A stretch of DNA of 64,000 bases, taken from the IMG/VR virus record IMGVR_UViG_3300026521_000471, positions 160,468 through 224,467 of that record; one strand, given 5' to 3'. Shown one piece after another: positions 20,824 through 62,695 of the stretch. Position 1 is the first letter of the stretch. The number at the start of each line of letters is the position of its first letter. The position numbers and the translations under genes were made by a program. The notes beneath the pieces were generated by a model. The model worked only from the letters and a program-made list of their open reading frames with translations. It was not told the origin of the DNA and made no database searches.

Positions 20824-20991
20824 ATGAAATACGGTTTTAGTTTATTTGAATTAATTATTGTAGTTGTAATATTGGGAATTCTAGCAGCAGTTGCTATTCC
20901 TAGATTATCAAATTCTTCATCAAATAATGATAAAATTTCATACAAAAAAATAATTTTTACTAATGGTGATGGTGGATCCGCCGAGAATTGA
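20824..20991 (+). CDS. 55-aa type IV prepilin-like peptide (not in ORF track)
   Basis: MKYG|FSLFELIIVVVILGILAAVAIP N-methylation motif; GAGG RBS at end of ligase gene. Confidence 0.75.
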   Translation: MKYGFSLFELIIVVVILGILAAVAIPRLSNSSSNNDKISYKKIIFTNGDGGSAEN

Positions 20992-21351
20992 ACTCGGGTC
21001 TGCCACTACTTCCATTTAAATCTCATTTACAAGTTTAGTTTGATTTTTAATACTTTAATACTTAGATAACCAAACAAATCGGTATTAAAGGCACTTGATA
21101 TAATTTTCGTCTAAAGGTATCAAGTTTAACTTTAGCTTATCTATTTTTTATTATACACTCTGTATTTATTAGTAAATAGACAACTAATAAACTGAGTGAT
21201 TCCGGGCTCCCAGAGGGAGGATTAAGCAGCTACTCTCGCAGTCTGTGGAATATAAAGTTTTGTGTTTGCATTTAAGCTTTTTTGATGATTAAGTCATCAC
21301 TCTACTTGCAATTTAAATTTCTTATAGCAACATCGATCCCAATTCGGACCC
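20970..21351 (-). ncRNA. ssrA: tmRNA, 382 nt, tag (A)ANTKLYIPQTARVAA*
   Basis: 5' GGGUCCG pairs with 3' CGGAUCC-ACCA with G3.U wobble; T-arm CCGAG-UUCAAUU-CUCGG; tag ORF 21269-21222 ends AA-stop. Confidence 0.96.
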
Positions 21352-21669: not shown

Positions 21670-23169
21670 ATGGCAAAATTTAACCAAGGTACTAAAAGTA
21701 TCCCAAATAGTAAAAATATGGCTGGAGGGGTATCATATGATCGCCCAATAAAAAAAGAGGTTGCGACTGTTGTTTTAAACTCTATGCTTAATGGTGATTC
21801 ATATTATGAAAAAGAAGGTGAACGTTTAAAACGAATTGAAACTCTTATCACTACATCAAAGTCTGATGCTGAGTTTGTAGCAAAAGCTATGGTGTTTACT
21901 AGAACAAATGGTCGTCTTAGAAGTATTTCACATTTCATGGCAAATATTTTAGCAGAAAATGTAAAAGGTAGTGACTTTTTACGTTCAGCATTAACAAAAG
22001 CTATTGTAAGACCGGATGATATGACAGAAATGTTATCACTTTGGGATACAAGAAATCCAAATAAAATGGTTCCGAATTCACTTAGAAGAGCCTTTAAGAA
22101 AGCTTTGGAAACTAAATTTGATGAATATCAATTTCGTAAATATGCTCAACCAAAATCAAAAGTGAAACTAAAAGATGTCGTTAAACTAGCACATCCTTCA
22201 CCTAAGAATTTTGATGATGAAACTATTTTTAAAAGAGTTATCGAAGATCAATTAAAGGCTGTTGAAACAGCACAAACTATCAATGCATCTAAAACTGGTG
22301 AAGATCGAGTTGAAGCATATATGAAAGAAATTAAATCTGGTAAAATGGGTTATATGGCAGCATTAAAAAATATTAGAACATTGATGGAAAATAATATTTC
22401 AGAAGATGACTTAAAACAATGGTCTAATTTTATAACTGATCCTAAAAGGGTACAAAAATCAATGGTACTTCCATTTAGATTTGTTGATGCATGGAATGCT
22501 GTAAAAGATTTACCTATTAATGAATTTAAGAAAAATATTGTTAAGAAAGCACTTGAGAGAGCTTTTGCCCTATCAGCTGGAAATACAAATATTGCTTCTG
22601 ATGATGAAAAAGTGGCTATTTTACTTGATGAATCAGGTTCTATGGGCGGATATTCAAATAATGACCGTAAAACACCATTTTATATTGGTAAAGTATTATC
22701 AGCTGCGATGAAAGTAGGTATGGATGATGATAAGTGTCTGTTTTATACTTGGGCAGATACATGTACAAGAAGAGATATAAAAGGTTTGTCATCTTTTGAT
22801 TTTATCAATAATTTAAATACTAGAGGTGGAGGTACTGATGTATCAGCTCCTTTAAAAGAGTTAATTAAAACAAAAACATTTGTTGATAAAATTATAATCT
22901 TTAGTGATATGCAGATGTATGGTGGATGGGGAAATATTGGAGATCAACTCAAAAATTATTTAAAAACATATCGTAAAGAAGTCAATCCAAATGTAAAAGT
23001 ATTATTTTGGAATTTAGAAGGATATGGTGGTGGTTCACCATTAGATATTGAAAAAACATCTGATATTTTTGAAGTAGCTGGTTTTTCAGATAGCATGCTT
23101 CAAATTATACCTAAATTATGGAGTGATAAAGATTTTTTAATTAAAGAGATTGAAGCTATATCACTTTAA
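21670..23169 (+). CDS. TROVE + vWA protein (Ro60/Rsr family)
   Basis: NMAGG.SY, RPDDMTE, EYQFRKY, LKDVVKLAHP, MAALKNIR, LPFRF; vWA LDESGSM, GGGTD, IFSDMQ. Confidence 0.92.
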   Translation: MAKFNQGTKSIPNSKNMAGGVSYDRPIKKEVATVVLNSMLNGDSYYEKEGERLKRIETLITTSKSDAEFVAKAMVFTRTNGRLRSISHFMANILAENVKGSDFLRSALTKAIVRPDDMTEMLSLWDTRNPNKMVPNSLRRAFKKALETKFDEYQFRKYAQPKSKVKLKDVVKLAHPSPKNFDDETIFKRVIEDQLKAVETAQTINASKTGEDRVEAYMKEIKSGKMGYMAALKNIRTLMENNISEDDLKQWSNFITDPKRVQKSMVLPFRFVDAWNAVKDLPINEFKKNIVKKALERAFALSAGNTNIASDDEKVAILLDESGSMGGYSNNDRKTPFYIGKVLSAAMKVGMDDDKCLFYTWADTCTRRDIKGLSSFDFINNLNTRGGGTDVSAPLKELIKTKTFVDKIIIFSDMQMYGGWGNIGDQLKNYLKTYRKEVNPNVKVLFWNLEGYGGGSPLDIEKTSDIFEVAGFSDSMLQIIPKLWSDKDFLIKEIEAISL

Positions 23170-43164: not shown

Positions 43165-43310
43165 CCCTACATATTAAGTTCCTATATTATAACATATCTC
43201 GAAGAGAAAGTCAAGTCCTCCTCTTTTAATATTCTTTATATATTCTTTAGGCAAAGTACAAACGTTTTTTGCCGGTGTTTATAAGGTCTTAAAAGATGGT
43301 TATAGAAAAA

Positions 43311-43476
43311 AATCAATATTGGTTTGTGTTATAATCAATATTGGATTGTGGTAATAAGGCATTAAATCAATATTAGATTGTGTTACCGACTAAAAATCAA
43401 TTTTATTTTGTGGTTGTGTATATCTTACTTTTTCAATATTAAAGCACTAATAATATTGATTTTTAGTCAATATTAA
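43311..43476 (+). repeat. iteron array / putative replication origin upstream of rep
   Basis: AATCAATATTrGwTTGTG copies at 43311, 43333, 43365, 43395 (degenerate); half-sites tcaatatt / aatattgatt at 43433-43474. Confidence 0.8.
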
Positions 43477-43517: not shown

Positions 43518-44678
43518 ATGAATATTGAAAAATTGGAAATTAATAAGCCTAGTGAATTGACCCAAGTTGTTTTTACACAACAAATAAAAAAAGAGCTTAA
43601 TATTTATAAAATGTCGGCATTACAAATAGATCTTATAAATGTCATGTTTTATAAGATACGAAAGGAAATTGGTAAGCATAAATTAGAAATAGATGAATCA
43701 CAACCATCAACACTTTTTGAATTTACATTAAATGATTTTAATAATATGCTACAGAAATATAACAATAATCAATATGGTGAAATTATTGAACAATTAGATT
43801 CATTATCCGATATAAAAATCATAATTAATAGTATTGGTAAAAATAAAGATATTGATGAAATGATCATTACTAGATTCATTCAAGAAATAAGAGTATCAAA
43901 GCATAGAAAAACCGAAAAGAAAAAGATTAAATTAGCAATTTCAAATACAATTATAAAAAGATTTATAGATGTTAAAAAATATTTTTCAAAAATGTTTTTA
44001 ACTATACAATTCTCTATGAAGTCTAAATATTCTAAATTGTTATATGAATTATTAAAAGATTATGAAGGTATAAATACAAAACAATTTGAGTTGAATGTTT
44101 TAATGGACTTGATCAACGTTAGTGAAGATTCGCAGAGAGTATGGTCAATATTCAACCAAAACATTCTCAAAAAGGCAGTTAAAGAAATCAATGAGAAATC
44201 GGATATAAAAGTTTCGTATGAACCTATTAAAGAAAGACCTGATAATGGCAGGTTACAAGTAACTAAAATTAAGTTTATAATAGAAGAGCAACAATGTGCT
44301 TTAATAGATAGTCAAGAGCCTGAAATGTCAATAGAAGAACAATTGCTTTATAATAAAAAAAGGGCTATAGCAGAAGAAAGATTAGAAAAGGCAAAACAAT
44401 TCCAAGAAATCAATAATGAAGAAGCATGGATTAAAAAGACTATTAAATCTATTACAGATGATTATGTTGAATTACAGGATTTAATAGAAGAGTCTAAAGA
44501 AGTTTTAGATAATACAGATTTATCAAAATTCAATGATTTATTGTTAATAAAATATGGCGATTTAGTTGGTATGGTAGATTATAAATTATGTTATGTTTTT
44601 GATGATACACAAGCACCACTTACAAGTAATGCTTATGAAACTTATTTGGTTTTAGAAGAATTAAAATCTAATCCATAG
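43518..44678 (+). CDS. Rep_3 (RepB/RepE-like) replication initiator
   Basis: MKSKYSKLLYELLKDY, FNQNILKKAVKEINEKSDIKVSYE, VTKIKF; iterons upstream. Confidence 0.85.
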   Translation: MNIEKLEINKPSELTQVVFTQQIKKELNIYKMSALQIDLINVMFYKIRKEIGKHKLEIDESQPSTLFEFTLNDFNNMLQKYNNNQYGEIIEQLDSLSDIKIIINSIGKNKDIDEMIITRFIQEIRVSKHRKTEKKKIKLAISNTIIKRFIDVKKYFSKMFLTIQFSMKSKYSKLLYELLKDYEGINTKQFELNVLMDLINVSEDSQRVWSIFNQNILKKAVKEINEKSDIKVSYEPIKERPDNGRLQVTKIKFIIEEQQCALIDSQEPEMSIEEQLLYNKKRAIAEERLEKAKQFQEINNEEAWIKKTIKSITDDYVELQDLIEESKEVLDNTDLSKFNDLLLIKYGDLVGMVDYKLCYVFDDTQAPLTSNAYETYLVLEELKSNP

Positions 44679-45870: not shown

Positions 45871-46614
45871 TTAAAATATAAACATATCTTGTAATTGTTG
45901 AGGTAAAAAGCTATTATCTCCACTCATCTCTGCAACTTTAATTTTTATATTTGCATCATAATCTTTATGTTTTAAAATTCGGAGTTGTGCTCTACTTAAT
46001 CCATCTGAATCTATAGCTAGGAACATATAGTCGGCAGTATAACCTAAACTATTAAAAAAATTCATATTTAAATCAGCTTCATAAAAATTATTTTGTAATT
46101 CTTTAAGAGATGATAAAGAAGATCCAGTATGCATATCAGAAAGAATTTCACCAAAAAATCCATAATGATTTTTAAACGTAGATATAATATGTTTCTCTAA
46201 TCCATTTAAAAGCAAATCAAATGCAAACCGTTGATAATTACTCACCTTATTTAATTTATCTGCTACATCATTAATGATTTCTTCATCTAATGCATCATTT
46301 TCTATAAACATCTTCATAGGATTTTTTAAACTATCGTCTTTATTTTGATAATAATCAACTAGCAGAGAATATATAAAACTTTTTGAAATTTTAAAATGAT
46401 GTTTTCTTTGTTGCAATTGTTCTATCTGCATGTCCCTTTCCTTTTTAGCTTGAGTAACAGCTTTATAACTTTCTATGATTTCATCATACTCATCAGGGTA
46501 TAACTCTTCATTATTAATTTCAAAAGGTATTTCACACAATCCATCAGAAAAGAGAGGACAACCATCCCCACAATTTCCATTCATTCCAATAGACTCACAA
46601 GTATATGTAATCAT
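45871..46614 (-). CDS. hypothetical protein, Cys4 N-terminus (C-terminal LPQQLQDMFIF)
   Basis: Promoter cassette upstream. Confidence 0.65.
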   Translation of the reverse strand: MITYTCESIGMNGNCGDGCPLFSDGLCEIPFEINNEELYPDEYDEIIESYKAVTQAKKERDMQIEQLQQRKHHFKISKSFIYSLLVDYYQNKDDSLKNPMKMFIENDALDEEIINDVADKLNKVSNYQRFAFDLLLNGLEKHIISTFKNHYGFFGEILSDMHTGSSLSSLKELQNNFYEADLNMNFFNSLGYTADYMFLAIDSDGLSRAQLRILKHKDYDANIKIKVAEMSGDNSFLPQQLQDMFIF

Positions 46615-46693
46615 AATACACCTTTTCTTTAATTATGTCATATTATATCATTATTTGAGTAAAAAGTCAAGTTAATATGTTGGGGGATTCTAA

Positions 46694-46716
46694 TTGATAA
46701 TGATTATTATTATCAA
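46694..46716. promoter_or_regulatory. Fur-box-like palindrome A
   Basis: GATAATGATTATTATTATC, 18/19 to classical Fur box. Confidence 0.65.
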
Positions 46717-46904
46717 TATTGATAAATGTATTTTAAGTTTAGTTTAAAATAAGTTGGGTGTTAAATTTAAGTGGATTTTAATAAAAGGTGGAATTTCTCT
46801 TTAAAAGAAATTCCGGCGAAATAATAAAAATCATAACGAACTTTTTCTTTGTTTTGATTTATATTAATTTTATTTATGTAAGAAAATATTTTTTTATTAA
46901 TTTT

Positions 46905-47171
46905 TTAATAAATCTTAGGGTTTATTACCGTTATTTCATATATTTTTGTTCTAATATTATAAGTTACACCCATAACAAAAGGTTTTTGGCGGAATTTTAT
47001 ATTTGGTAAAAAATGCACAATATCAAAAAAAATATCATTTGGAATGAGTCTATCAAATTCCCCATGCTTATATTTTAAAATTATAAAATCATCTTTAGAT
47101 TTTTTTATTGCTGCATCTTTATAAAATCTAGAGAGTAATTTTTCAATATCTTCTTCTTTAACATTTTTCAA
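46905..47171 (-). CDS. hypothetical protein
   Basis: TTG start after GAGG. Confidence 0.45.
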   Translation of the reverse strand: MKNVKEEDIEKLLSRFYKDAAIKKSKDDFIILKYKHGEFDRLIPNDIFFDIVHFLPNIKFRQKPFVMGVTYNIRTKIYEITVINPKIY

Positions 47172-47172
47172 A

Positions 47173-47388
47173 TTAAAAATCCTCTAAAAGCATTTTAACC
47201 GTATCCTCAAAACTTTCTTTAATCATTGATCGTCTAATCATCTCTGTTTTTATTGCAGCCAATAATTTTTCAGCCTTTAATCGTTCATCATGAGCATCAT
47301 CAGTCCCATCAAAAACATGATCGAATAATCCTGCATCAGTTACATTATCTCCTACTTTTGTAAAAGGTCCTTTTCCAGTCATTTCCAT
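47173..47388 (-). CDS. hypothetical protein
   Basis: GGAG RBS, promoter upstream. Confidence 0.6.
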   Translation of the reverse strand: MEMTGKGPFTKVGDNVTDAGLFDHVFDGTDDAHDERLKAEKLLAAIKTEMIRRSMIKESFEDTVKMLLEDF

Positions 47389-47444
47389 AATAATTTCTCC
47401 ATTCTTATTAATATATTATACCACAATTTACTAAATAAATCAAG

Positions 47445-49466
47445 CTATTTAGTAGCTGTAGCATATTTCATTGCAGTTTTAAACTGTTTTTCATCTGTTA
47501 AGTCTAAATACCCTTTCCATTCCATTGCTCCAGGCATCATATCAATTCCTGCTGCAAAATCTGCAGGATTACCAGGTAAAGCTGAAATTCGACCCTGTGC
47601 AGTTTCAATACTAATTCCAGTCATGGTTAAAAATTTCTTAACTGAAATCGTAAATTTAACATCCTCTGACATTTTAAAGATTCTACTACCAAAATATTTA
47701 TCTATAACTTTTTTTGCTTTAAGAGTTCTTGCAACCTGAGCTTCAGCAGAACTTGTAGCTTGTGATAAAGCGTGATCTCTAATCATTTCATCTGCTAATT
47801 TATTATTTGTAACCAATTTAAGTGTTGGTACTTTAAGTTTAATATCTTTCTTAGATAATGCTATATCTTCATGCAAGGTATCAACATTAATTTTAAACTG
47901 TTTTGCTATTTCAGATCCAATATTCTTAAACGTTTCCGCAATTATTTCATTAAAAGTATAATTGAATTTAACTGGAGCCTCAGTATATTTATCCCACCCA
48001 AAATCATTTAATAACATATTATTTAATTTAGCTTTTTGCATATCATAATTTTTCTTAATAGTTTGCAAAGTAAGAGTAATTACCGGATTGTCAAAATGTT
48101 TTATAATCGCGTCTAAAACATTATCTGGAGTAACACCTACTGTATAACCAGGTTTTAAACCATATTTAATACAATTATAAACATCTGTAAAAGCATCTTT
48201 AATTTTTGGAATTTGATCTTCATTAGGTTTGAATCCATATCGTAACCATACATAACCACCCATACCAATATTTGCATGTAGCTCAACTTTTTTAATTCCA
48301 GCAGCTTTATATAATTTCAACATATCAGTAATTGCTGATTTAGATAAACCTGTCTTTTGAGCCGATGGTGGAACTTCAAATAGTGTGTGTTGTACCTTCT
48401 CAATCTCCCCATTATCACCAATAGTAAATGTTCTAGTAAAGTTTGTTTCCTCTTGAATATCTTGAAAACTTACTACTAGTTGATTACCAATCATTTTACT
48501 AGTTGTTAAAAATTCTCTATTTAATTCATTAGGAATAAACTTTGCAAAATTTACAAGAATATCAGATACCATAACACTTACTACTTTCTTGATTTTTTTA
48601 GCTTTTTTCTCTGGATATTTACTTAAATCAATATCATTAATTGCAGCATGTAATTGATTCTCAACAATATCAGCTTTAGCCTCAACTTCTGGTGAAATTT
48701 TTGCTTCCTTAAATTTAATTTTTGAATATTCTTCAATATCAACTAAATCTATATCTAACTCATGGGTTAATGTTTCTACTTCAGACATCTTTGAATCCAA
48801 AACATCATTATTTTTAGAAATTCGTTCATTTACAGTTTTGCTAATAATATCAATTTCTTCAGTACTCATAGAACGTAATTTAGAATTTAAATCCGGTTCT
48901 AAATCATTTTGAGTATCCTCAGCAGGTATAACTTCCTCATCATTTTGGTTGATTTGTTGAGGTTTTACATCATTTTCAAAAACAAGTATTCTTGTTAGTT
49001 CTAATGTATCCCTACCCCTTAATCCCGGCTTTTCGTGTAATAAAGTTTTTGCAAACTTAATTATAACTTTTTTCTGATAATCGTTTAATTCACCATGCTT
49101 TGTTTTTGCAAAAGCTGTTCCTAAAACTGATGGTTTATAGCTATTAATCTTTGCATAACGTAATAGAGTTTCAAATAATAAATCGTATAATTTTTTCTTA
49201 TGAGGTTTTAATGCAGCTATCGATTTTTTAGTCTTTAAAACTTTTCTTAAACTATTGTATCTAGTAGTTATTTCTTTTAAGTTTTCACTTTCTTCAAATG
49301 CTTTTTTTACTTTAGGTCCGGTAGGTAGGGACTCATAATCTCTTAATTGACATGTAAGAATTAACCTTAAAATATTAACAGGTTCTGAATATTTTTTAAA
49401 TTTTGTACCGTCTACTGGAGTATAATTTTCTCTCTCAAGCAATTCTACTATTCTTGCCATTTTCAT
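47445..49466 (-). CDS. large protein with central GNAT-like acetyltransferase domain
   Basis: FEVPPSAQKTGLSK (Q/RxxGxG/A-like), GIKKVELHANIGMGGYVWLRYGF. Confidence 0.6.
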   Translation of the reverse strand: MKMARIVELLERENYTPVDGTKFKKYSEPVNILRLILTCQLRDYESLPTGPKVKKAFEESENLKEITTRYNSLRKVLKTKKSIAALKPHKKKLYDLLFETLLRYAKINSYKPSVLGTAFAKTKHGELNDYQKKVIIKFAKTLLHEKPGLRGRDTLELTRILVFENDVKPQQINQNDEEVIPAEDTQNDLEPDLNSKLRSMSTEEIDIISKTVNERISKNNDVLDSKMSEVETLTHELDIDLVDIEEYSKIKFKEAKISPEVEAKADIVENQLHAAINDIDLSKYPEKKAKKIKKVVSVMVSDILVNFAKFIPNELNREFLTTSKMIGNQLVVSFQDIQEETNFTRTFTIGDNGEIEKVQHTLFEVPPSAQKTGLSKSAITDMLKLYKAAGIKKVELHANIGMGGYVWLRYGFKPNEDQIPKIKDAFTDVYNCIKYGLKPGYTVGVTPDNVLDAIIKHFDNPVITLTLQTIKKNYDMQKAKLNNMLLNDFGWDKYTEAPVKFNYTFNEIIAETFKNIGSEIAKQFKINVDTLHEDIALSKKDIKLKVPTLKLVTNNKLADEMIRDHALSQATSSAEAQVARTLKAKKVIDKYFGSRIFKMSEDVKFTISVKKFLTMTGISIETAQGRISALPGNPADFAAGIDMMPGAMEWKGYLDLTDEKQFKTAMKYATATK

Positions 49467-49533
49467 TCCTTTATCTGTTTTAATCTATTTATTCAAAAAA
49501 TAACTTTATTTTTAAAAAAATGGGGGGTGCTAA

Positions 49534-49620
49534 TTGATAATGATTATTAAAATCATTATCAAATAATTTTAAGATTAAATTAAGGGTCTAAATGATTTTG
49601 ATAATAATAATCATTATCAA
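49534..49620. promoter_or_regulatory. Fur-box-like palindromes B and C
   Basis: ttgataatgattattaaaatcattatcaa (49534-49562); GATAATAATAATCATTATC (49600-49618, 18/19 match). Confidence 0.65.
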
Positions 49621-49765
49621 TTTGACCCCGACACCTCTTGAAATTCTAAAATAACTTTTCTTATTTCGATTGCTAAGGTAGTTGAAAAAATTCCCTGATA
49701 AATCCTTGACTTATTTACTTTATTTTGATATAATATATCTATAATAAATAAAAGGAAAATAAACT

Positions 49766-50611
49766 ATGGAGATGAATGTGATTAAAGCAATAGAGGAAGC
49801 AGAAGTAGTTATTATTACAGCAGGTGCTGGGATCGGGATTGATTCTGGCCTACCAGATTTTCGTGGAAATGAAGGAATGTGGAAAGCTTACCCACCACTA
49901 AAAAAGAAAAATATTGACTTTATGTCAATTGCTAATCCAAAACAATTTAAACAATATCCTGAACTTGCTTGGGCTTTTTACGGTCATCGTTTTGACACTT
50001 ATAAAGCGACAACTCCAAATATTGGTTTTGCAGCCTTGAAAGAGTTAGTTAAAGATAAAAAAGATTATTTCATTGTTACATCGAATGTTGATGGACAATT
50101 TCAGAAAGCCGGATTTGATAAAAATAAAGTATATGAAGTGCATGGAAGAATCAATAAGTTTCAATGTACTGATTGTAATGCAGAACCTTGGGATGCACCG
50201 GAAGATACAAAGTTTGATGTGGATCCCAACACGTTTAAAATTAAAGGGGAACTTCCAAAATGTCCTAAATGTGGTGCAATGGCTAGACCAAATATTATGA
50301 TGTTTAATGATTTTGGATTTAATACGAAAGAAACTTCTGAACAAGAAAAACGTTTCAATCAATTCATGCATAAGTATGACAAAAACGGTACAAAAATAGT
50401 AGTTATTGAAATTGGTGCTGGTACAGCAATACCAACTATTAGAAATATGGGTGAATTTATACAAGAAAAAATACCGGATGCGCAGCTTGTTAGAATTAAT
50501 CCTAGAGAATCTCATGGTCCAATAGGTACAATATCAATTCCAAAAGGTGGCGTTGAAGCATTAGGTGAAATTCTACCTAAGAAAATAGCAGATCTATTTT
50601 TTGTGAAATAA
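49766..50611 (+). CDS. Sir2-family NAD-dependent deacylase
   Basis: TAGAGIGIDSGLPDFRG, TSNVDG, EVHG, CTDC/CPKC, RPNIMMF. Confidence 0.92.
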   Translation: MEMNVIKAIEEAEVVIITAGAGIGIDSGLPDFRGNEGMWKAYPPLKKKNIDFMSIANPKQFKQYPELAWAFYGHRFDTYKATTPNIGFAALKELVKDKKDYFIVTSNVDGQFQKAGFDKNKVYEVHGRINKFQCTDCNAEPWDAPEDTKFDVDPNTFKIKGELPKCPKCGAMARPNIMMFNDFGFNTKETSEQEKRFNQFMHKYDKNGTKIVVIEIGAGTAIPTIRNMGEFIQEKIPDAQLVRINPRESHGPIGTISIPKGGVEALGEILPKKIADLFFVK

Positions 50612-51832
50612 TTATCCCATTGTATAACTAATAGAGCAATTCTTTATATATTCTGTGGTTTCTACAATATCATAGTGACCTTTTTTCATAAATGATTGGA
50701 TCTTCATCCTAGTGTCTCTGGCACTAGTAGATACCTCAACACCTTTTTCTATATCATAGAGCTTATAATTATTATTAACTGTTATAAATTGATTATCTTT
50801 ACTATAATCTTGTAAAACCACTAAACCTTCGTGCTCATAGTTATTATATTTGATATTATTCAACCATTCTTGTAATAACACTTTAGCTTCATATTCATCT
50901 CTTAATTTAAAAGCTTCTTTTCGTAGCTTATGTTTGTATGCTTCAGGATTTTCTATAGCATCTTTTGTTTTGAATCTCGTTATTTCTTTAAACTTACGAT
51001 TTATATCTCTTTCTACATAATATGCAACTTTTCTATTCATCAAAAATTCTTTACTAAAGTACGTATCTGGATCTTCAACTTCAGGTGCAACATGTGTTAC
51101 TATTCTAACTTCAGCTGTTTGTACTCTATTTGTTTCAGCAACAGTTGATTTAATTTTATTATATTCAAAATATAAATTTGTTTTTTCATTTAACTCTTTA
51201 GAAACCCTCTTTAAAATATTGCTATTTAACCTTGACCAAGTAAGCTCTTTATATTCCAAACCAAAATCGATCATTCGCACTAATTCTTCTATTGAATAAG
51301 TGCTTACAGTTCTATCTTTTTTATAGAATTTTTCATAAATTATTTTGCTATATTTGCTTTTCAATCCATACTTATCAATTCTATACAACAATGCAAATAA
51401 ATGCAGATTATTTCTCAATAACTTAACTAAAGTAGTATTTACAATAATATTCAATCTTTTATTAATGTCATTATCAGTACTACTTATATTATATTGATAA
51501 ACAAATGTTGCTTTAGACATAAGAACACTATTATCATTTTCATGGTATATTGTTGCAACAGATTTTGAAAGCGATTCAAGTGTTTGCATGATAGTTTCAA
51601 TACGCAATTCTAAAAAACCCAATGATGAAGATAATTCATGCATATTAGTATCTATCACGTATCCTAATTGATTTCGATCAATACCTTCCGTAGCAAAAGC
51701 ATCATCTCGTTCAACAATATTAATAAGTACATTAACTAAGTCAATTTCAGATTTTGTAATATTCCAAAAGAGATGTTTAAATTTAGATTGCAACCATAAG
51801 ACCTTTATAATTTTTAAATTATTTATACTCAA
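50612..51832 (-). CDS. second Rep_3-like initiator protein
   Basis: LKSKYSKIIYE, WSRLNSNILKRVSKELNEKTNL; paralogous to 43518-44678. Confidence 0.7.
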   Translation of the reverse strand: MSINNLKIIKVLWLQSKFKHLFWNITKSEIDLVNVLINIVERDDAFATEGIDRNQLGYVIDTNMHELSSSLGFLELRIETIMQTLESLSKSVATIYHENDNSVLMSKATFVYQYNISSTDNDINKRLNIIVNTTLVKLLRNNLHLFALLYRIDKYGLKSKYSKIIYEKFYKKDRTVSTYSIEELVRMIDFGLEYKELTWSRLNSNILKRVSKELNEKTNLYFEYNKIKSTVAETNRVQTAEVRIVTHVAPEVEDPDTYFSKEFLMNRKVAYYVERDINRKFKEITRFKTKDAIENPEAYKHKLRKEAFKLRDEYEAKVLLQEWLNNIKYNNYEHEGLVVLQDYSKDNQFITVNNNYKLYDIEKGVEVSTSARDTRMKIQSFMKKGHYDIVETTEYIKNCSISYTMG

Positions 51833-51949
51833 TATTTTACAAAAAACTAAAAAATATTTTTTAAGTTTTTTTAGTTTTGGGGTTATTTTTATATTCCTTT
51901 AAGTAAATTTGTGATATAATATTTCATATTAAAAATAAAAAGGAAAAAC

Positions 51950-53074
51950 ATGCTACCACACATCATTAATGGGAATGGGACAATCAGTATTATGTTGGAT
52001 GGGACTATGAAACCTATCGATACAGCGCATAAAAATTATGAAGCCATTAAAGAGGCTCTTAAAAACCAAGAATGGGATTTAGTACCAGAATTAGTAAATA
52101 TTGCTCAAGAAGTAGAAGATGCAATCAATGCAAGTGATATTGGTGAAAATACAGTTACTATTAAGGATGGAGAAGTACTATATAATGGTAGTCCTATCCA
52201 TAATACACTAACTGATCGTATTATTTCAATGGCAAAAGAAGGCTTTGATATTAGTCATATGGTTAAATTCTTAGAAAATCTTATGAAAAACCCTTCATAT
52301 CGTGCTGTAAATGAACTTTATGATTTTCTTGAAGTCGGTGCAATTCCAATTACTGAAAATGGAACATTTCTCGCTTACAAAAAAATCAGAAATGATTGGA
52401 AAGACATTTATACAGGGACGATTGATAACTCAATAGGTGCAGTTATTTCAATGCCTCGTAATCAGGTAAATGAAGACTCTAATCAAACTTGTAGTACTGG
52501 GTTACATGTTTGTAGTTACGATTATCTTCCTTCATTTGGTTCAACTGGCGATGATAGAGTTGTTATCTGCGAAATAAATCCGTCGGATGTTGTTTCTATC
52601 CCAAAAGATTATAACAATACTAAGATGCGATGTTGCGAATATAAAGTAATCGGTGAAGTTGAAGATTATCAAGCTGAAAACACTTTAGCTAAACAATCAG
52701 TAGTCGAAACTTCAGATGTTACAGAAGGTAAAATCGATGGTACTGTTGATACTGTTGCTGAAGAAGCAAAGGCTATCGGAAAACAAATTACTGATGGATT
52801 AGACGATTGTACTATCGATGATGCATGGATCAGAGCAGTTCTAAATGATAAAGGTTTGCCAAATGAAACTATGAAATCATTTAATAGAAAAACTCTAAGA
52901 AATGATACAACAGGCATTGGTAAGATGATTGCACGATTAATCAAATCTGGTGATCTAGATAAATCTATTCTAGATGAGATCCTCGAAAAAGATACTTCTG
53001 AAGATGTATGTGGTCGTTGTGGTCATGATTTAGATGGAATGAGTGAATGTCCGAGTTGTGGATACTACAATTAA
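51950..53074 (+). CDS. rIIB: RIIB-like protein
   Basis: FLENLMKNPS, ELYDFL, GTFLAYKKI, MPRNQV, CSTGLHVC, DVVSIPKDYNNTKMRCCEY. Confidence 0.9.
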   Translation: MLPHIINGNGTISIMLDGTMKPIDTAHKNYEAIKEALKNQEWDLVPELVNIAQEVEDAINASDIGENTVTIKDGEVLYNGSPIHNTLTDRIISMAKEGFDISHMVKFLENLMKNPSYRAVNELYDFLEVGAIPITENGTFLAYKKIRNDWKDIYTGTIDNSIGAVISMPRNQVNEDSNQTCSTGLHVCSYDYLPSFGSTGDDRVVICEINPSDVVSIPKDYNNTKMRCCEYKVIGEVEDYQAENTLAKQSVVETSDVTEGKIDGTVDTVAEEAKAIGKQITDGLDDCTIDDAWIRAVLNDKGLPNETMKSFNRKTLRNDTTGIGKMIARLIKSGDLDKSILDEILEKDTSEDVCGRCGHDLDGMSECPSCGYYN

Positions 53075-53207
53075 ATCTACCTTAAAATAACTTCAAATTT
53101 TGGTCATAGATAATATTCTATGACCATTCTTCATTTTTTTACCTCTAAACTTGACTTTTAATTTAAATTTTGATATAATATAGTAATTTTAAATTAAAGG
53201 AACATTT

Positions 53208-54068
53208 ATGTCAGAAGTACAAATCCCATTATCCGAACAAGAATCTTTTAAATCGTTTGAAGAAGCCTATCATTCAGTTCAAGGAACAAGAACATCTATG
53301 GTTATGAAATTTAAATCATATACCGGTCCTAGCTATGGTATTGATGACTTATTTTCTGTTGCAGATGAAGCAATCGTTAAAGCATGGAATGATTGGGATC
53401 CATCAATGTCAAAGTTTAATACATATGTTCAAAATCATATTCAATGGGGTATTTGGAATTTTTTAAATGCTATGAATAGCACCTTTAAAACTAATGCAGT
53501 AACCACATATGAATTGACTCAAGAAGGTGACTCATATAAGGAGATAAAGGAGAGAGGTTTAACAAAATCTAAAGAATTCAATGATTTGCATGAGCTTGAT
53601 GGGAGTGAACAGGCAAAAGATCGATTTAATAGAGATCTATTCAATGAGTATGTTCGTTTTGAAACATCAAAAAGACGACCATTTAAACTTGCAACTGCAT
53701 CAAATTTTCAAACTCAAGATGCCGATGATTTTGATATTATGGAAACTGCGGTAGGGACTCCATTTGCAGAAAAATCATGGATAGAAGATTTAAATATGAC
53801 AGAAGCAGAAGTTGAACTTGAAATTACCAAATTAGATAGAGACAAGCGTAGAGTAGCAGAAGCATTACTAAATGGTGAAACTATATCTGATTTAGCAAAA
53901 GAGTTTGGAGTTTCAAAAATAGCATTTATGCAGATGTTTGCACCTGAAACATCCGGAACTAGAGGTAAAGCAAAAATATCAAGAAAACAAGCACGACTAG
54001 CTCATGCAAAAAAACAACGAGCTTTAAAACTTGCGCAAATAAATGAAAAAAGTGCCAATGAGGCTTGA
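53208..54068 (+). CDS. sigma70-family-like factor
   Basis: Region-2-like DDL..ADEAIVKAWNDWDPSMSKFNTYV; region-4-like HTH GETISDLAKEFGVSK. Confidence 0.7.
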   Translation: MSEVQIPLSEQESFKSFEEAYHSVQGTRTSMVMKFKSYTGPSYGIDDLFSVADEAIVKAWNDWDPSMSKFNTYVQNHIQWGIWNFLNAMNSTFKTNAVTTYELTQEGDSYKEIKERGLTKSKEFNDLHELDGSEQAKDRFNRDLFNEYVRFETSKRRPFKLATASNFQTQDADDFDIMETAVGTPFAEKSWIEDLNMTEAEVELEITKLDRDKRRVAEALLNGETISDLAKEFGVSKIAFMQMFAPETSGTRGKAKISRKQARLAHAKKQRALKLAQINEKSANEA

Positions 54069-54121
54069 TTTATTTCCTAATTTTAGATATAATTATATAT
54101 ATTTAAATTAAAGGAACAATT

Positions 54122-54511
54122 ATGAAAGTTTGGACTGAAAATTATGGAGCTGATGCAGATGGTAACAGAGGTATTTTAACAACTTTTGCAGAGTTAGAGC
54201 CAGAGGATGATGAGGTAGTTATTGAAGAACTATATGAATCATTTATTGAAGATAGAGGCGATTTACCAAAAACGATGAATGTTTATATAGATGACTTTGA
54301 ATTTGAAGTTGATACTGAAGATTATCGTGATCAATTAGTTGGGCGTTTAATGGAAGATGAAGATACAGATTTAGAAGATAAATTCCTAGTTCTTTATTGG
54401 CTTAAAGAGAATGAGACTGATGATTATAAGAACGAACTCGATTTGGTAACTGCTAAATTAACAGCAAAAGTAGCTGATACAACCGAACGATTGATTGAAG
54501 AATATCTCTAA
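54122..54511 (+). CDS. acidic hypothetical protein
   Basis: Promoter cassette upstream. Confidence 0.6.
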   Translation: MKVWTENYGADADGNRGILTTFAELEPEDDEVVIEELYESFIEDRGDLPKTMNVYIDDFEFEVDTEDYRDQLVGRLMEDEDTDLEDKFLVLYWLKENETDDYKNELDLVTAKLTAKVADTTERLIEEYL

Positions 54512-54574
54512 AAAGCTTGACTTTTTAGTCAAGTTATGTTATAATATGGCATAATTAATCAAAAGGATAACAAA

Positions 54575-54850
54575 ATGGTAAAAGTTAAAGTTTCAAATAT
54601 GGTAGGTAATAGTGGTAGAGAAGTAGCAAATCAATTTATCATCGAAACAGATGAAGGTAGATTTTTTCAATCATACGAAACGATCATAGCATTTATTGCA
54701 AATGATGGTTCTGTTACACTAAACAATATTTATGATCATTCAACTACAACTGGGAAATACAGAAATGCATTCTTAGGTGATAGTGGTGTTGCTGAAACAA
54801 GAAAAAAAGTTGCAAGTGGAGAATATAAACTTGCGGATTTAAATTCATAA
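54575..54850 (+). CDS. conserved phage hypothetical protein
   Basis: ANQFII..FQSYETIIA..STTTGKYRN.FL. Confidence 0.65.
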   Translation: MVKVKVSNMVGNSGREVANQFIIETDEGRFFQSYETIIAFIANDGSVTLNNIYDHSTTTGKYRNAFLGDSGVAETRKKVASGEYKLADLNS

Positions 54851-54861
54851 GGATAGAGGTC

Positions 54862-55080
54862 ATGACAATTTTATTAACAGCATACAACCCTAACTTTAGT
54901 GATAAAGTTAAAGCTAATATTAGTGCTAAAGTTGAGCCTACTATGGTTTCAACCCATAGCGATAGTCAATCATTCGATTTGGAAGCTGCAGTAAATATTA
55001 TTACTCATTTTGGAAATGATAATGATCAAGAGATTCTAGAAAATTTGAATCAACAACATGTGGATTATATTGAATTTTAA
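54862..55080 (+). CDS. hypothetical protein
   Basis: RBS present. Confidence 0.55.
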   Translation: MTILLTAYNPNFSDKVKANISAKVEPTMVSTHSDSQSFDLEAAVNIITHFGNDNDQEILENLNQQHVDYIEF

Positions 55081-55150
55081 TTCAAAATACTTGACTTTAT
55101 ACCTAAATTAGGGTATAATATATTATATAAAAAGAAAAGGATAAAAACAA

Positions 55151-55465
55151 ATGCCATTAACAAAAGAAATCAAAATGGGAATTTACACTAAAGGTTCTGG
55201 GATTAGACTTATCGGTGAATTAGATTTAATCACTCAAGATGAAGGCCATAAAGATGAAGCGATTTATTTGGTTACAATGGCCATGATGAGAGACCCGAGA
55301 GAACCAATCGGTGAAAAAGAGATGAAAGAATACGAAAATGCTGTCAAATCTATGTTTAGAGATCATAGACATGATTATAAAGCTAAAGATCGTGCTGAAG
55401 CAGATAAATTCATTGAATATAATATAGGGTCTTGGGAAGAAGTAAGATCTCTATCTAAAATCTAA
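55151..55465 (+). CDS. hypothetical protein
   Basis: Promoter cassette upstream. Confidence 0.6.
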   Translation: MPLTKEIKMGIYTKGSGIRLIGELDLITQDEGHKDEAIYLVTMAMMRDPREPIGEKEMKEYENAVKSMFRDHRHDYKAKDRAEADKFIEYNIGSWEEVRSLSKI

Positions 55466-55552
55466 AACCCTTTGTGGACTTTTTGAGCCGGTAAGTCCCT
55501 TATAAAGAAACATGGCAATTCCTTTGTAAGAAACTCTATACACTATAACACT

Positions 55553-55661
55553 TTGTGGAAAGAGATGGGAACATCTGGTGGAGGGGCTATCTCTTCCACA
55601 ATAGTAAGAATAGTGAAGATGAATTTGGGTGGTGTGCACTTTTTCATCTTCACTATTCTTA
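55553..55661. other. two adjacent long hairpins (candidate structured RNA)
   Basis: 13-bp stem with one bulge (55553-55601); perfect 19-bp stem (55605-55623/55643-55661). Confidence 0.65.
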
Positions 55662-55685
55662 TTGTATAATAAATAGTAGAAAACT

Positions 55686-56708
55686 ATGGAGTTATATATG
55701 CCTCAATCAAAAACAATCAAAATACAAGTTTGGACAGATTTAAATTATTGTAGAGTAATTGGTATATGGTATCCTGAAGAACCAGAAGATGCTATTGATT
55801 TTAATGATGCACCATATCTGTTAGTATTATCTAGTATTTTTGAACCTCGTACTGAAGTTATGGGTAATAATCCTATTGCACCAGGTCAACATCCAATACC
55901 TAAAGATTTTTTAGAAAAACAAATAAGACATATAAGTTATCTTTTTGCAAATGATTTTGGTACTTTTCAACCATATTCAAAAGGGATAGCAAAAACATTT
56001 TTAGCTAAACAAACTGTATCATATAAAAAAGTAAAAGAGTTTGATATGACCGTTACACCTGCATCTGGCTCTATATCATTAAAGGCATTTAGAGATAGTA
56101 TTGACCAATATACAGAAGAAGAACAAGAAGCTATCCAAGTAATGACTATTGGTGAAAATCCTCAAGATGCTCATGCTAAAGATATTGAAGATTTTATACA
56201 TATAGAAAAAAGCGATAACATTGAACAATATATCTCAATAACAAAACTTACCCCAGTTTATGGTATAGATGATCCATATATTGTTAAAACAAGTCTCCCT
56301 GAAGATCCTGCATTTTCATCTCTTCCTCCAGGTACAGAAGATGCAGAAGCATCACAAGAATTTATAGAAACCGTTGAAGCTGCAAAAACAGAAGATACAA
56401 TCAATAGAGAGACTTTAATAACTTATGATACTTTGTCTGAAACACCTCAACCCGTTCTTGATGAAAACGGTGAGCAAGTTCTTAATGAAAACGGTGAACC
56501 TGTTACCGAATTAAGAGAACCAACAAGAGAAGAAGTTTTAGAGGCTTTATTAAAAGATAAAGAGGCTCAAATTGCAGCCCTTCAACCTCAACCAGTAAAG
56601 GAAAAATTACCTCAACCATTATCAGAAGCAGATCTATTCCCAGAGGAAGCTGCAGACCAATTAGAAAGAGAAACCCTCAATACAACATTCACACCAAAAG
56701 AGATGTAA
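55686..56708 (+). CDS. acidic Pro/Glu-rich protein, possibly late/virion-associated
   Basis: AATAAATA and GGAG before ATG 55698; VLDENGEQVLNENGEP repeat. Confidence 0.6.
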   Translation: MELYMPQSKTIKIQVWTDLNYCRVIGIWYPEEPEDAIDFNDAPYLLVLSSIFEPRTEVMGNNPIAPGQHPIPKDFLEKQIRHISYLFANDFGTFQPYSKGIAKTFLAKQTVSYKKVKEFDMTVTPASGSISLKAFRDSIDQYTEEEQEAIQVMTIGENPQDAHAKDIEDFIHIEKSDNIEQYISITKLTPVYGIDDPYIVKTSLPEDPAFSSLPPGTEDAEASQEFIETVEAAKTEDTINRETLITYDTLSETPQPVLDENGEQVLNENGEPVTELREPTREEVLEALLKDKEAQIAALQPQPVKEKLPQPLSEADLFPEEAADQLERETLNTTFTPKEM

Positions 56709-56712
56709 TTTT

Positions 56713-56741
56713 TTGATAATGATTTTAATAATCATTATCAA
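56713..56741. promoter_or_regulatory. Fur-box-like palindrome D
   Basis: ttgataatgattttaataatcattatcaa, exact reverse complement of B. Confidence 0.65.
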
Positions 56742-56824
56742 TTAGCCCCCATTTAAATTAATAAACTTGACTTTTTACCTATTTTATGTTATAATATGGC
56801 ATAATTAAAGAAAAGGTGTAAAAG

Positions 56825-57169
56825 ATGATTATCACAACAAATAATGATATTAAAATCTACCAAATTTTTGAAGATATATATGATGGTATTGATAATTTTA
56901 TGGATATAGAAAGTCGTAATGTTATTGAACTTACAAAAATTATTATTAATAAAAACTCTCAGTTTAAGACACCAATATTTTTAGACAGTTATAGTAAAAG
57001 AATTGATAAATCATTTAAAAGAGAAACTGTGTGGTTTATTAAATGTGATAGTATAGTTTTTGATTGTAAAAGTGAAGAAATTGCAAATGCACTTTTTGAC
57101 AAAATTGCCTTAGTTTTAGAATTTGGCGATGAACCTTTAAAAACTGTCGATGACCTTTTTGTATTTTAG
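56825..57169 (+). CDS. hypothetical protein (C-terminal DDLFVF)
   Basis: Promoter cassette upstream. Confidence 0.6.
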   Translation: MIITTNNDIKIYQIFEDIYDGIDNFMDIESRNVIELTKIIINKNSQFKTPIFLDSYSKRIDKSFKRETVWFIKCDSIVFDCKSEEIANALFDKIALVLEFGDEPLKTVDDLFVF

Positions 57170-60748: not shown

Positions 60749-61054
60749 ATGAAAATTCAAAAAATAGAAGCTTACAAAACAACAGATGATAAAATCTTTG
60801 ATAATATAGAAGATGCAGAAGATCATCAATATATCCTAGAACTACCAGCAAATGAAAATCAACATTTATCTAAAAGAGAACAAGAAGTATTTAACTATCT
60901 AACTAAAACCTCTTTAGAAAATAAAGAGATAGCAGAAAAACTTGGTGTTACTCTTACTACTATCAAAGCACATAGCAAAAAAATCTATGAAAAAACAAAT
61001 ACAAAAAATCGTATAGAATTACTTATAAATCTTCAAAAAGAGTTGACTTATTAA
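60749..61054 (+). CDS. LuxR-type HTH regulator
   Basis: LSKREQEVF..NKEIAEKLGVTLTTIKAHSKKIYEK..NRIEL. Confidence 0.88.
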   Translation: MKIQKIEAYKTTDDKIFDNIEDAEDHQYILELPANENQHLSKREQEVFNYLTKTSLENKEIAEKLGVTLTTIKAHSKKIYEKTNTKNRIELLINLQKELTY

Positions 61055-62577: not shown

Positions 62578-62695
62578 TTCCAAAAAAGATTAGTTTTTAC
62601 CTCTATTTTACTCTGATTTTTAGTTCCAAAAAAGATTAGTTTTTACCTCTATTTTACTCTGATTTTTAGTTCCAAAAAAGATTAGTTTTTACCTC
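62578..62695. repeat. 46-bp tandem repeat, ~2.6 copies
   Basis: ttccaaaaaagattagtttttacctctattttactctgatttttag at 62578, 62624 and partial at 62670. Confidence 0.9.

What the first reader, a model, noticed from the sequence alone, without database searches (positions are those of the whole stretch)
46682..56750. Four Fur-box-like palindromes with G-run flanks around the divergence centre
Seen: A (46694) and C (49598) match GATAATGATAATCATTATC at 18/19 and are inverted copies. B (49534) and D (56713) are inverted copies of a 29-bp version with one extra hexamer. All have a G-run and AATT on the same side. A and D lie ~20-25 bp upstream of cassette -35 boxes; B and C lie between the divergent GNAT and sirtuin genes. 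No iron-uptake genes are nearby. Inference: host Fur/PerR (iron or peroxide status) gates the early region, perhaps a lytic versus carrier decision. Alternatively these are sites for a phage protein or recombinase.
Basis: partly seen in the sequence, partly recalled or inferred. Interest (0 to 1): 0.65.

Follow-up and report, generated by a model that had tools for sequence, protein, structure and literature searches.

The report
Fur-box operators in a jumbo phage
Four conserved, near-perfect copies of the DNA site recognised by the bacterial iron-sensing regulator Fur sit at the borders of the central early/replication gene block of a 224-kb hydrothermal-vent phage. This suggests the phage reads (or soaks up) its host's metal sensor, but binding is untested and the sites lie upstream of the promoters, where Fur does not classically repress.

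Summary
Four palindromes (window 46694-46716, 49534-49562, 49598-49620, 56713-56741) are the only such sites in the 224,467-bp phage genome; about 0.01 are expected by chance.

- **Structure.** A and C are exact inverted copies, as are B and D. The 23-bp form equals the 29-bp form minus one hexamer. All four carry a G-run and AATT on the same side.
- **Selection.** In a relative about 89% identical, all four sites persist. They differ at 5.8% of positions, against 12% in promoter cassettes and 26% in other intergenic DNA (p=2e-6).
- **Fur likeness.** The sites are Fur-type: 18/19 to the consensus, built of overlapping 7-1-7 repeats. The same 18-mer core lies just upstream of a TonB-dependent receptor gene and of a ZnuA/ABC-3 metal-uptake operon in environmental bacteria.
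- **Phage regulators.** The phage has no Fur, DtxR, XRE, RHH or AbrB regulator, no ParAB and no recombinase. It does encode a GerE/LuxR HTH protein.
- **Against simple repression.** The sites sit about 70-75 bp (C about 130 bp) upstream of transcription starts. Their spacing to the promoters varies, and they touch only 4 of about 20 early units.

Best reading (about 0.5): operators for the host's Fur-family regulator. A gate on the whole early region, or a lytic/carrier switch, is not supported.

The parts
46682..46716 (+). Unit A: G5 run (46682-46686), 5-nt spacer, AATT, 23-bp palindrome (46694-46716). It lies 23 bp upstream of the -35 of the leftward cassette promoter; centre about -70.
   Evidence: In the relative 19/23 positions are kept and the distal half has decayed.
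49522..49562 (+). Unit B: G6 run, 4-nt spacer, AATT, 29-bp palindrome (49534-49562). It lies 67 nt upstream of the ATG of the 671/673-aa gene.
   Evidence: In the relative 28/29 positions are kept; the one change is in the central loop.
49598..49629 (-). Unit C: 23-bp palindrome (49598-49620), AATT, 3-nt spacer, C4 run. It is the exact inverted copy of A and lies 85 nt upstream of the -35 of the sirtuin promoter.
   Evidence: In the relative 22/23 positions are kept, and a Rep3 gene separates it from the sirtuin promoter.
56713..56750 (-). Unit D: 29-bp palindrome (56713-56741), AATTAG, C5 run. It is the exact inverted copy of B. It starts 5 nt after the stop of the 340-aa gene and ends 25 bp upstream of the -35 of the rightward cassette promoter; centre about -75.
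   Evidence: In the relative 29/29 positions are identical while both flanks change. The spacer reads CT here and AGCT in a 99.8%-identical strain.
46642..46670 (-). Cassette promoter downstream of A (TTGACT, 17 nt, TG-extended TATAAT), driving the 247-aa gene 45871-46614.
56767..56795 (+). Cassette promoter downstream of D, driving the 114-aa gene 56825-57169 and following genes.
49706..49734 (+). Sirtuin promoter (consensus sigma-70 type), driving SIR2 49766-50611.
49477..49493 (-). Conserved AATAAATAG..TAAAA promoter-like element 25-30 nt upstream of the 671-aa gene start. It is present in all six phage lineages compared; there is no sigma-70 consensus here.
47445..49466 (-).
46790..46814 (-). 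Intrinsic terminator closing the leftward 671-aa/71-aa/88-aa unit, just before unit A.
49522..49629 (.). B+C composite: a 108-bp imperfect inverted repeat whose G-run and C-run pair at the base. On the minus strand a T7 run follows, so it is terminator-like for leftward transcripts.
   Evidence: I14; -38 to -39 kcal/mol, z -5.6 to -6.8. The two substitutions in the relative are not compensatory.

Best explanation
**Claim.** The four units are high-affinity operators for a Fur-family metal-sensing regulator supplied by the host.

**Inferred binding.**
- Each 23-bp site holds two 7-1-7 inverted repeats offset by 6 bp. This is the classical 21-bp Fur box, which binds two dimers on opposite faces.
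- Each 29-bp site adds one hexamer. Its two good 7-1-7 repeats are offset by 12 bp, so it could hold two or three dimers.
- Metal-loaded regulator would occupy the four borders of the two divergent central early/replication units.

**Inferred effect.**
- The boxes lie upstream of the core promoters, and their spacing to the promoters is not conserved.
- So I do not expect classical promoter occlusion.
- The effect is more likely modulation from upstream: nucleation or spreading over AT-rich UP regions, a roadblock or boundary between units, or simple titration of the regulator.

**Shown:** sequence, uniqueness in the genome, selection, Fur-type architecture, and the same core in front of bacterial metal-uptake genes.

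**Inferred:** that Fur binds, and what binding does.
For: 1. A and C match the 19-bp consensus at 18/19. Per PMC7536154, not even E. coli contains the exact consensus.
2. All six 7-1-7 matches with at most one mismatch in 224 kb lie inside the four sites. Outside them the count is at background: 14 against 12.4 expected.
3. The two length classes differ by exactly one hexamer. A rigid dimer with fixed half-site spacing could not use both, while Fur recognises hexamer arrays and offset 7-1-7 repeats (PMC7536154, PMC3950669).
4. The exact 18-mer core plus a G-run was found in bacterial metagenome contigs:
   - 37 nt upstream of a TonB-dependent receptor gene, with a second Fur-like box nearby;
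   - about 65 nt upstream of a ZnuA-family/ABC-3 metal transporter gene in three related genomes.
   - That is 2 of 4 independent bacterial loci.
5. Purifying selection: 6/104 differences in the palindromes, 18/150 in promoter cassettes and 87/331 in other intergenic DNA against an approximately 89% relative; Fisher p=2e-6.
6. The phage encodes no Fur, DtxR, XRE-HTH, RHH or AbrB-type regulator.
7. Other bona fide phages in IMG/VR carry exact 21-bp Fur-consensus boxes in intergenic regions next to terminase or replication genes.
Against: - The boxes do not overlap -35/-10, where Fur boxes typically sit (PMC7536154).
- Box-to-promoter spacing varies: 23 against 30 bp at A, and 25 against 26 bp at D.
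- No iron-related gene is regulated.
- Fur recognition does not explain the conserved one-sided G-run (7 of 8 sites) or the AATT.
- Distant relatives with the same synteny lack any such site.
- The substitutions in the relative fall in the central spacers and spare the arms, which would fit any palindrome-binding dimer.
- The host is unknown, so nothing is known of its Fur.
Confidence: 0.5

Rival explanations
1. The sites are operators for a phage-encoded DNA-binding protein. That protein could be the GerE/LuxR-type HTH protein at 60749-61054 or one of the many unannotated small early proteins. It would bind the palindrome arms, perhaps the G-run as well, and set the timing of the central units. 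The Fur likeness would then be coincidence or mimicry.
For: - The sites are specific to this lineage, and distant relatives lack them.
- The arms are conserved while the central spacers change.
- The one-sided G-run/AATT is conserved, which Fur does not explain.
- A GerE-family HTH protein (E=1.7e-12) is encoded under an early promoter and kept in close relatives.
Against: - Two spacing classes 6 bp apart are awkward for one rigid dimer.
- The 18/19 match to a host consensus, and identity with bacterial metal-gene operators, would be a striking coincidence.
- No LuxR-type box known to me resembles this one (own knowledge).
- No other regulator family was detected.
Confidence: 0.25
2. The sites are structural nucleic-acid elements rather than protein operators. 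They would be hairpins or cruciforms acting as terminators or insulators, or as homology patches for cassette shuffling, like the promoter-early stem-loops (PeSLs) of T4-type phages.
For: - The phage has about 20 PeSL-like conserved promoter cassettes, and some -35 boxes lie inside stem-loops.
- D follows a stop codon by 5 nt.
- B+C folds into a long G/C-clamped hairpin followed by T7 on the minus strand. There it could stop transcripts from Rep2, or from the Rep3 gene inserted in the relative.
- PeSLs are described in PMC2839356.
Against: - Single units are weak AT hairpins without a T-tail: A is -5.2 kcal/mol, z -2.2.
- A lies behind a proper terminator, so it is unlikely to be transcribed.
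- The substitutions in the relative break the long B-C hairpin rather than compensate.
- Only 2 of about 20 cassettes carry a unit.
- Structure alone does not explain the exact Fur-type sequence.
Confidence: 0.1
3. The sites are replication or segregation sites. They would be operators for the Rep3-type initiators, origin elements at the GC-skew minimum, or dispersed centromere palindromes as in the linear plasmid-prophage N15.
For: - Two Rep3-like genes and an iteron origin lie within 6 kb.
- The cumulative GC-skew minimum is at 49-52 kb.
- A Rep3+iteron module is inserted right beside C in the relative.
Against: - The iterons share no half-site with the palindromes.
- No ParA or ParB is encoded.
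- Relatives with the same Rep genes lack the sites.
- The skew minimum coincides with the switch in gene direction, so it is not independent evidence.
Confidence: 0.07
4. The sites are recombination sites or terminal inverted repeats. A/C and B/D would be invertase targets, or A..D and B..C would be the ends of mobile elements.
For: - The copies form exact inverted pairs.
- The G-runs lie at the outer edges of both A..D and B..C.
Against: - No tyrosine or serine recombinase is encoded.
- No inversion joints at the sites appear in four runs, although these are contigs only.
- No target-site duplications are present (read).
- Gene order across the region is ancestral in relatives that lack the repeats.
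Confidence: 0.04

Closest known systems
Fur box: 19/21-bp consensus, 7-1-7 repeats offset by 6 bp, GATAAT hexamer arrays; H. pylori holo-Fur box TAATAATnATTATTA (PMC7536154, PMC3950669)
   Same: The sequence matches (18/19). The architecture matches: overlapping 7-1-7 repeats, with length varying by one hexamer. The identical core precedes bacterial metal-uptake genes.
   Different: The sites lie upstream of core promoters rather than over them. There is no iron gene downstream. They sit in a virulent-type phage early region and carry an extra one-sided G-run/AATT.
Host Spo0A boxes in the early control region of the lytic Bacillus phages phi29 and Nf (PMC2731898)
   Same: Operators for a host global regulator are placed in the early region of a phage without a lysogeny module, coupling development to host physiology.
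   Different: The Spo0A boxes overlap the early promoters and also affect replication. Here the position is upstream, the effect is unknown and the regulator is different.
Iron-regulated phage-borne genes: corynephage tox under DtxR and stx1 under Fur (own knowledge, not checked here)
   Same: A host iron regulator binds a phage-carried operator.
   Different: Those are cargo (moron) genes of temperate phages with the operator over the promoter. Here the sites border core early/replication units of a jumbo phage.
PeSL promoter-early stem-loop cassettes of T4-type phages (PMC2839356)
   Same: Both have repeated strong sigma-70 promoter cassettes with palindromes and G/C runs in front of small early genes. 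Both have rIIB-type genomes.
   Different: PeSL stems are GC-rich terminators present at most cassettes. These sites are AT-rich and Fur-like, number only four, and two are not at cassettes.
Exact Fur-consensus boxes in other IMG/VR phage contigs (loci L034-L055, L080, L083)
   Same: Near-perfect 21-bp boxes lie in intergenic regions beside core phage genes. In L080/L083 a pair 76 bp apart sits in a divergent region.
   Different: Those contigs have one or two boxes each and are unrelated phages. None has the four-site arrangement or the 29-bp form.

Membership tests
Fur-family operator (Fur box) | At least three contiguous GATAAT-type hexamers, or a high match to the 19-bp consensus | tested here: met
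   A/C 18/19 and B/D 16/19. The sites hold 3 and 4 hexamers.
Fur-family operator (Fur box) | Two 7-1-7 inverted repeats offset by 6 bp | tested here: met
   A and C each have two 13/14 repeats offset by 6 bp. B and D have 13/14 and 12/14 repeats offset by 12 bp, with a weak middle one.
Fur-family operator (Fur box) | Overlaps the -35/-10 region of the regulated promoter | tested here: not met
   Centres lie about -70 (A), -75 (D) and -130 (C). B lies 67 nt before an ATG without a sigma-70 promoter.
Fur-family operator (Fur box) | Associated with metal-homeostasis genes | tested here: inconclusive
   Not in the phage. The same 18-mer does precede a TonB-dependent receptor gene and ZnuA/ABC-3 genes in bacteria.
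Fur-family operator (Fur box) | Metal-dependent binding by Fur | not testable with these tools
   Needs EMSA, footprinting or a Fur titration assay. The host is not identified.
PeSL cassette | A stable GC-rich stem-loop that terminates transcription, joined to an early promoter at most cassettes | tested here: not met
   A folds at -5.2 kcal/mol and has no T-tail. Only 2 of about 20 cassettes carry a unit.
Site-specific inversion or transposon ends | A cognate recombinase or transposase, plus evidence of rearrangement | tested here: not met
   No PF00589 or PF00239 hit. No inversion joints at the sites. Synteny is ancestral.
Plasmid-prophage centromere (N15-type dispersed palindromes) | ParA/ParB (SopAB) partition proteins | tested here: not met
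   No ParB_N or AAA_31 match.
Rep3 initiator operator | An inverted repeat built from an iteron half-site, placed at the rep promoter | tested here: not met
   The iterons at 43310-43415 have an unrelated sequence. The sites are not at rep promoters.

The most novel reading that the evidence does not exclude
A virulent-type jumbo phage of hydrothermal vents has recruited its host's Fur as an input or as a target. Four super-consensus boxes frame its central early/replication module. Two readings are open:
- The boxes couple expression of this module to the cell's iron status in an iron-fluctuating habitat.
- As the phage genome amplifies, the boxes act as a sponge that titrates Fur. This would derepress host iron uptake and feed the phage's iron-dependent ribonucleotide reductase.

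Together with the exact Fur boxes seen beside core genes of other uncultured phages, this would point to an overlooked and widespread phage strategy.
Probability: 0.15. Interest if true: 0.7.

Novelty: new variant of a known kind. Interest (0 to 1): 0.5.

Why it matters
Host-regulator sites in phage genomes are known: Spo0A in phi29, LexA, PhoB, and DtxR/Fur on toxin genes. An array of near-ideal Fur boxes under strong selection, inside the early/replication control region of a lytic-type jumbo phage, has not been described to my knowledge. If Fur binds, it would link phage development, or host iron uptake during infection, to metal availability in vent ecosystems. It also offers a simple test that could be extended to the roughly 110 other viral contigs carrying near-consensus boxes. 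If a phage protein binds instead, the sites define a new operator/regulator pair that mimics a host motif.

Tried and rejected
**Relatives and comparisons**
- Nucleotide search against deposited phages found no match.
- Exact unit, promoter cassette and 29-bp form with a free centre were not found in IMG/VR.
- Single-protein and profile searches of IMG/VR with the 673-aa and Rep2 proteins found nothing.
- The genome-contig scan gave only two unrelated MAGs.
- Distant relatives (30-40% aa identity, loci L005-L016) have no Fur-like site and no recurrent palindrome at the analogous places.

**Host**
- Identification failed. Virus records have no 'relatives' set.
- The MAG carrying a related contig is not held.
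- Literature search gave nothing specific. One paper search was malformed and one was wasted on an ambiguous term.

**Function of the sites**
- Rfam gave no family at the sites.
- A promoter inside the palindrome (TTGATA, 17 nt, TATCAA) was rejected: the -10 is poor and not shared by the 23-bp form.
- FNR, NikR, PerR and Zur readings were rejected on spacing or on the discriminating bases (own knowledge).
- The 10-mer shared by A's flank and the Rep1 iterons is within chance expectation.

**Proteins**
- The protein atlas gave nothing for the genes downstream of A and D.
- The PDB profile search of the 673-aa family gave nothing.

**Reads**
They are contigs only, so they give no starts or strands.
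- The near-identical strain was uninformative.
- RNA contigs show the phage is present in one metatranscriptome, nothing more.

**Not used**
- No alternative genetic code, the large protein-representative search, structure prediction or complex prediction.


Full report
**Source and setting.**
- The window is bases 160468-224467 of a 224,467-bp viral contig. It has 28% GC, is linear, and is estimated about 85% complete.
- The stretch is held by hydrothermal-vent, epibiont and biofilm metagenomes from seven studies.
- About 20 consensus sigma-70-type early promoters diverge from a centre at about 47-50 kb. They read TTGACT, 17 nt, TG-extended TATAAT, and most sit in a 66-nt conserved cassette with leader and ribosome site.
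- The central block holds these genes:
  - a 671/673-aa gene of unknown function;
  - a sirtuin gene;
  - a Rep3_C-like gene convergent with the sirtuin gene, with no gap between them;
  - rIIB and a sigma-like gene.
- A second Rep3 initiator lies at 43518-44678. Four 22-bp iterons lie upstream of it at 43310-43415.
- The cumulative GC-skew minimum is at 49-52 kb.

Chance expectation is 0.01.
- A equals the reverse complement of C, and B equals the reverse complement of D.
- Removing one hexamer from the 29-bp form gives the 23-bp form exactly.
- Oriented alike, every unit reads: G-run, 2-5 variable bases, then an identical 18-mer core beginning with AATT.
- G5/C5 runs are otherwise rare and mostly coding.
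- All four units have the same polarity toward the gene they precede: palindrome, AATT, C-run, then gene.
- It is the only recurrent palindrome family in the genome.

**They are selected.**
- A metagenome scan and a protein look-up uncovered a relative 86-91% identical in DNA (loci L024/L027, L026/L031) and strains 99.8% identical (L029, L030).
- The relative keeps all four sites:
  - D is 29/29 identical, while both immediate flanks change and 3 nt are inserted before the C-run.
  - B is 28/29 and C is 22/23. Each has a single change in the central spacer.
  - A is 19/23, and its distal half has decayed.
- Over the three intergenic regions, the palindromes differ at 6/104 columns, the promoter cassettes at 18/150 and the rest at 87/331. 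Fisher p=2e-6.
- The G-run is kept in 7 of 8 sites.
- The spacer next to the G-run is hypervariable. It reads CT against AGCT even between 99.8%-identical strains.
- In the relative a Rep3 gene with its own iterons is inserted between C and the sirtuin promoter. So C travels with B and the 671-aa gene, not with the sirtuin gene.
- Box-to-promoter distances differ between the two phages: 23 against 30 bp at A, and 25 against 26 bp at D.

**What they resemble.**
- A and C match the 19-bp Fur consensus at 18/19.
- All six 7-1-7 matches with at most one mismatch in 224 kb fall within the four sites. Elsewhere the motif is at background.
- The 23-bp sites therefore have the classical architecture of two 7-1-7 repeats offset by 6 bp. 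That architecture binds two Fur dimers, and at least three hexamers are needed for binding (PMC7536154).
- The half-sites also fit the Helicobacter holo-Fur box (PMC3950669).
- The two length classes differ by one hexamer. This suits a hexamer-array reader better than a rigid dimer.
- Independent support comes from bacteria. The exact 18-mer with a nearby G-run occurs at four independent bacterial loci:
  - 37 nt upstream of a TonB-dependent receptor gene, with a second Fur-like box 40 bp away;
  - about 65 nt upstream of a ZnuA-family binding-protein gene beside ABC-3 permease genes, in three related low-GC genomes;
  - upstream of a chemotaxis receptor gene;
  - at the end of metK, which is probably chance.
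- A strict 21-bp Fur pattern hits 112 stretches of IMG/VR. It includes the exact consensus 19 times, in genuine phages beside terminase/portal or processivity-factor/SSB genes. Nearly all carry one box and two carry a pair.
- A rough chance expectation for that pattern is about 30. Part of the excess is redundancy among related contigs.

**Who could bind.**
- The phage has no Fur, DtxR, XRE-HTH, RHH or AbrB-type protein, no ParA/ParB, and no tyrosine or serine recombinase.
- Small neighbouring proteins give no DNA-binding family.
- The one recognisable stand-alone regulator is a 101-aa GerE/LuxR HTH protein at 60749-61054. It is conserved in close relatives.

**Mechanism.**
- I commit to host Fur-family binding as the most likely explanation (about 0.5).
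- Classical repression by promoter occlusion is unlikely. The sites are centred near -70 (A), -75 (D) and -130 (C), and spacing to the promoters is not conserved.
- B lies about 70 nt upstream of the likely start of the 671-aa gene. That gene's conserved AATAAATAG element is shared by six lineages that mostly lack the box.
- More plausible effects are upstream modulation, a boundary or roadblock at the four edges of the two central units, or titration of Fur by the replicating genome. None of these can be told apart here.
- The B+C pair also forms a long G/C-clamped hairpin followed by T7 on the minus strand.
  - It could terminate leftward transcripts from Rep2, or from the inserted Rep3 gene in the relative.
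  - The relative's substitutions are not compensatory, so I treat this as secondary.
- The G-run and AATT remain unexplained.

- Fur-type identity is supported at the level of sequence, selection and bacterial context.
- PerR is slightly less likely.
- 'Gating the early region' and a 'lytic versus carrier decision' are not supported. Only four of about 20 units are touched, and no lysogeny or partition genes are present.
- The recombinase alternative is unsupported. The phage-protein alternative remains open.

**Novelty.** This is a new variant of a known kind: a host-regulator operator in a phage. Interest is moderate. The finding is well grounded as a selected element and is easily testable, but the function is unproven.

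Noticed in passing
window 20970-21351 (-): The phage encodes a tmRNA gene, found by ARAGORN (tag peptide ANTKLYIPQTARVAA) and by Rfam RF00023 at 115 bits.
   Followed up: partly
window 5122-6375, 8153-10843, 19418-20821, 21670-23169: An RNA-repair set: Hen1 methyltransferase, Pnkp kinase-phosphatase-ligase, a T4-type RNA ligase and a Ro60/TROVE protein, all close to the tmRNA gene.
   Followed up: no
window 43310-43415 and 43518-44678: Four 22-bp iterons (core ATCAATATTGG) lie upstream of a Rep3_N/Rep3_C initiator gene. This is a plasmid-type origin inside the early region of a jumbo phage.
   Followed up: partly
L031 8305-9842, 550-1737, 14793-18070: The approximately 89% relative has an extra Rep3 gene with different iterons inserted between site C and the sirtuin promoter. 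It also has an IS605-family TnpB insertion and two more Rep3 paralogues. Rep3+iteron modules appear to move within these early regions.
   Followed up: partly
window 49766-50611 (+) and 50612-51832 (-): The sirtuin gene and the Rep3_C-like gene are convergent with no intergenic base. Each transcript must therefore run antisense into the other gene.
   Followed up: no
window 49477-49493 (-); L005, L007, L009, L014, L015: An invariant ATAAATA..TAAA element lies 25-30 nt before the start of the 650-697-aa gene in six phage lineages. It resembles a -10-only promoter such as the T4 late type. It occurs only 5 times in this genome.
   Followed up: partly
window 60749-61054 (+): A 101-aa GerE/LuxR-family HTH protein (also similar to sigma-70 region 4) is encoded under its own early promoter.
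   Followed up: partly
window 62578-62695: A perfect 46-bp tandem repeat of 2.6 copies lies in a non-coding stretch near the contig end.
   Followed up: no
genome 67779-83762 (outside the window): A cluster of 22 tRNA genes.
   Followed up: no
L080 10449-10545, L083 4560-4656; L034-L055: Unrelated IMG/VR phages carry exact 21-bp Fur-consensus boxes. One has a duplicated pair 76 bp apart beside processivity-factor/SSB genes. One family has the box beside a G5/C5-clamped terminator upstream of the terminase genes.
   Followed up: partly
window 56742-56750 versus L029 and L030: The spacer between box D and its C-run differs by a 2-nt indel (CT against AGCT) between strains that are 99.8% identical elsewhere.
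   Followed up: no
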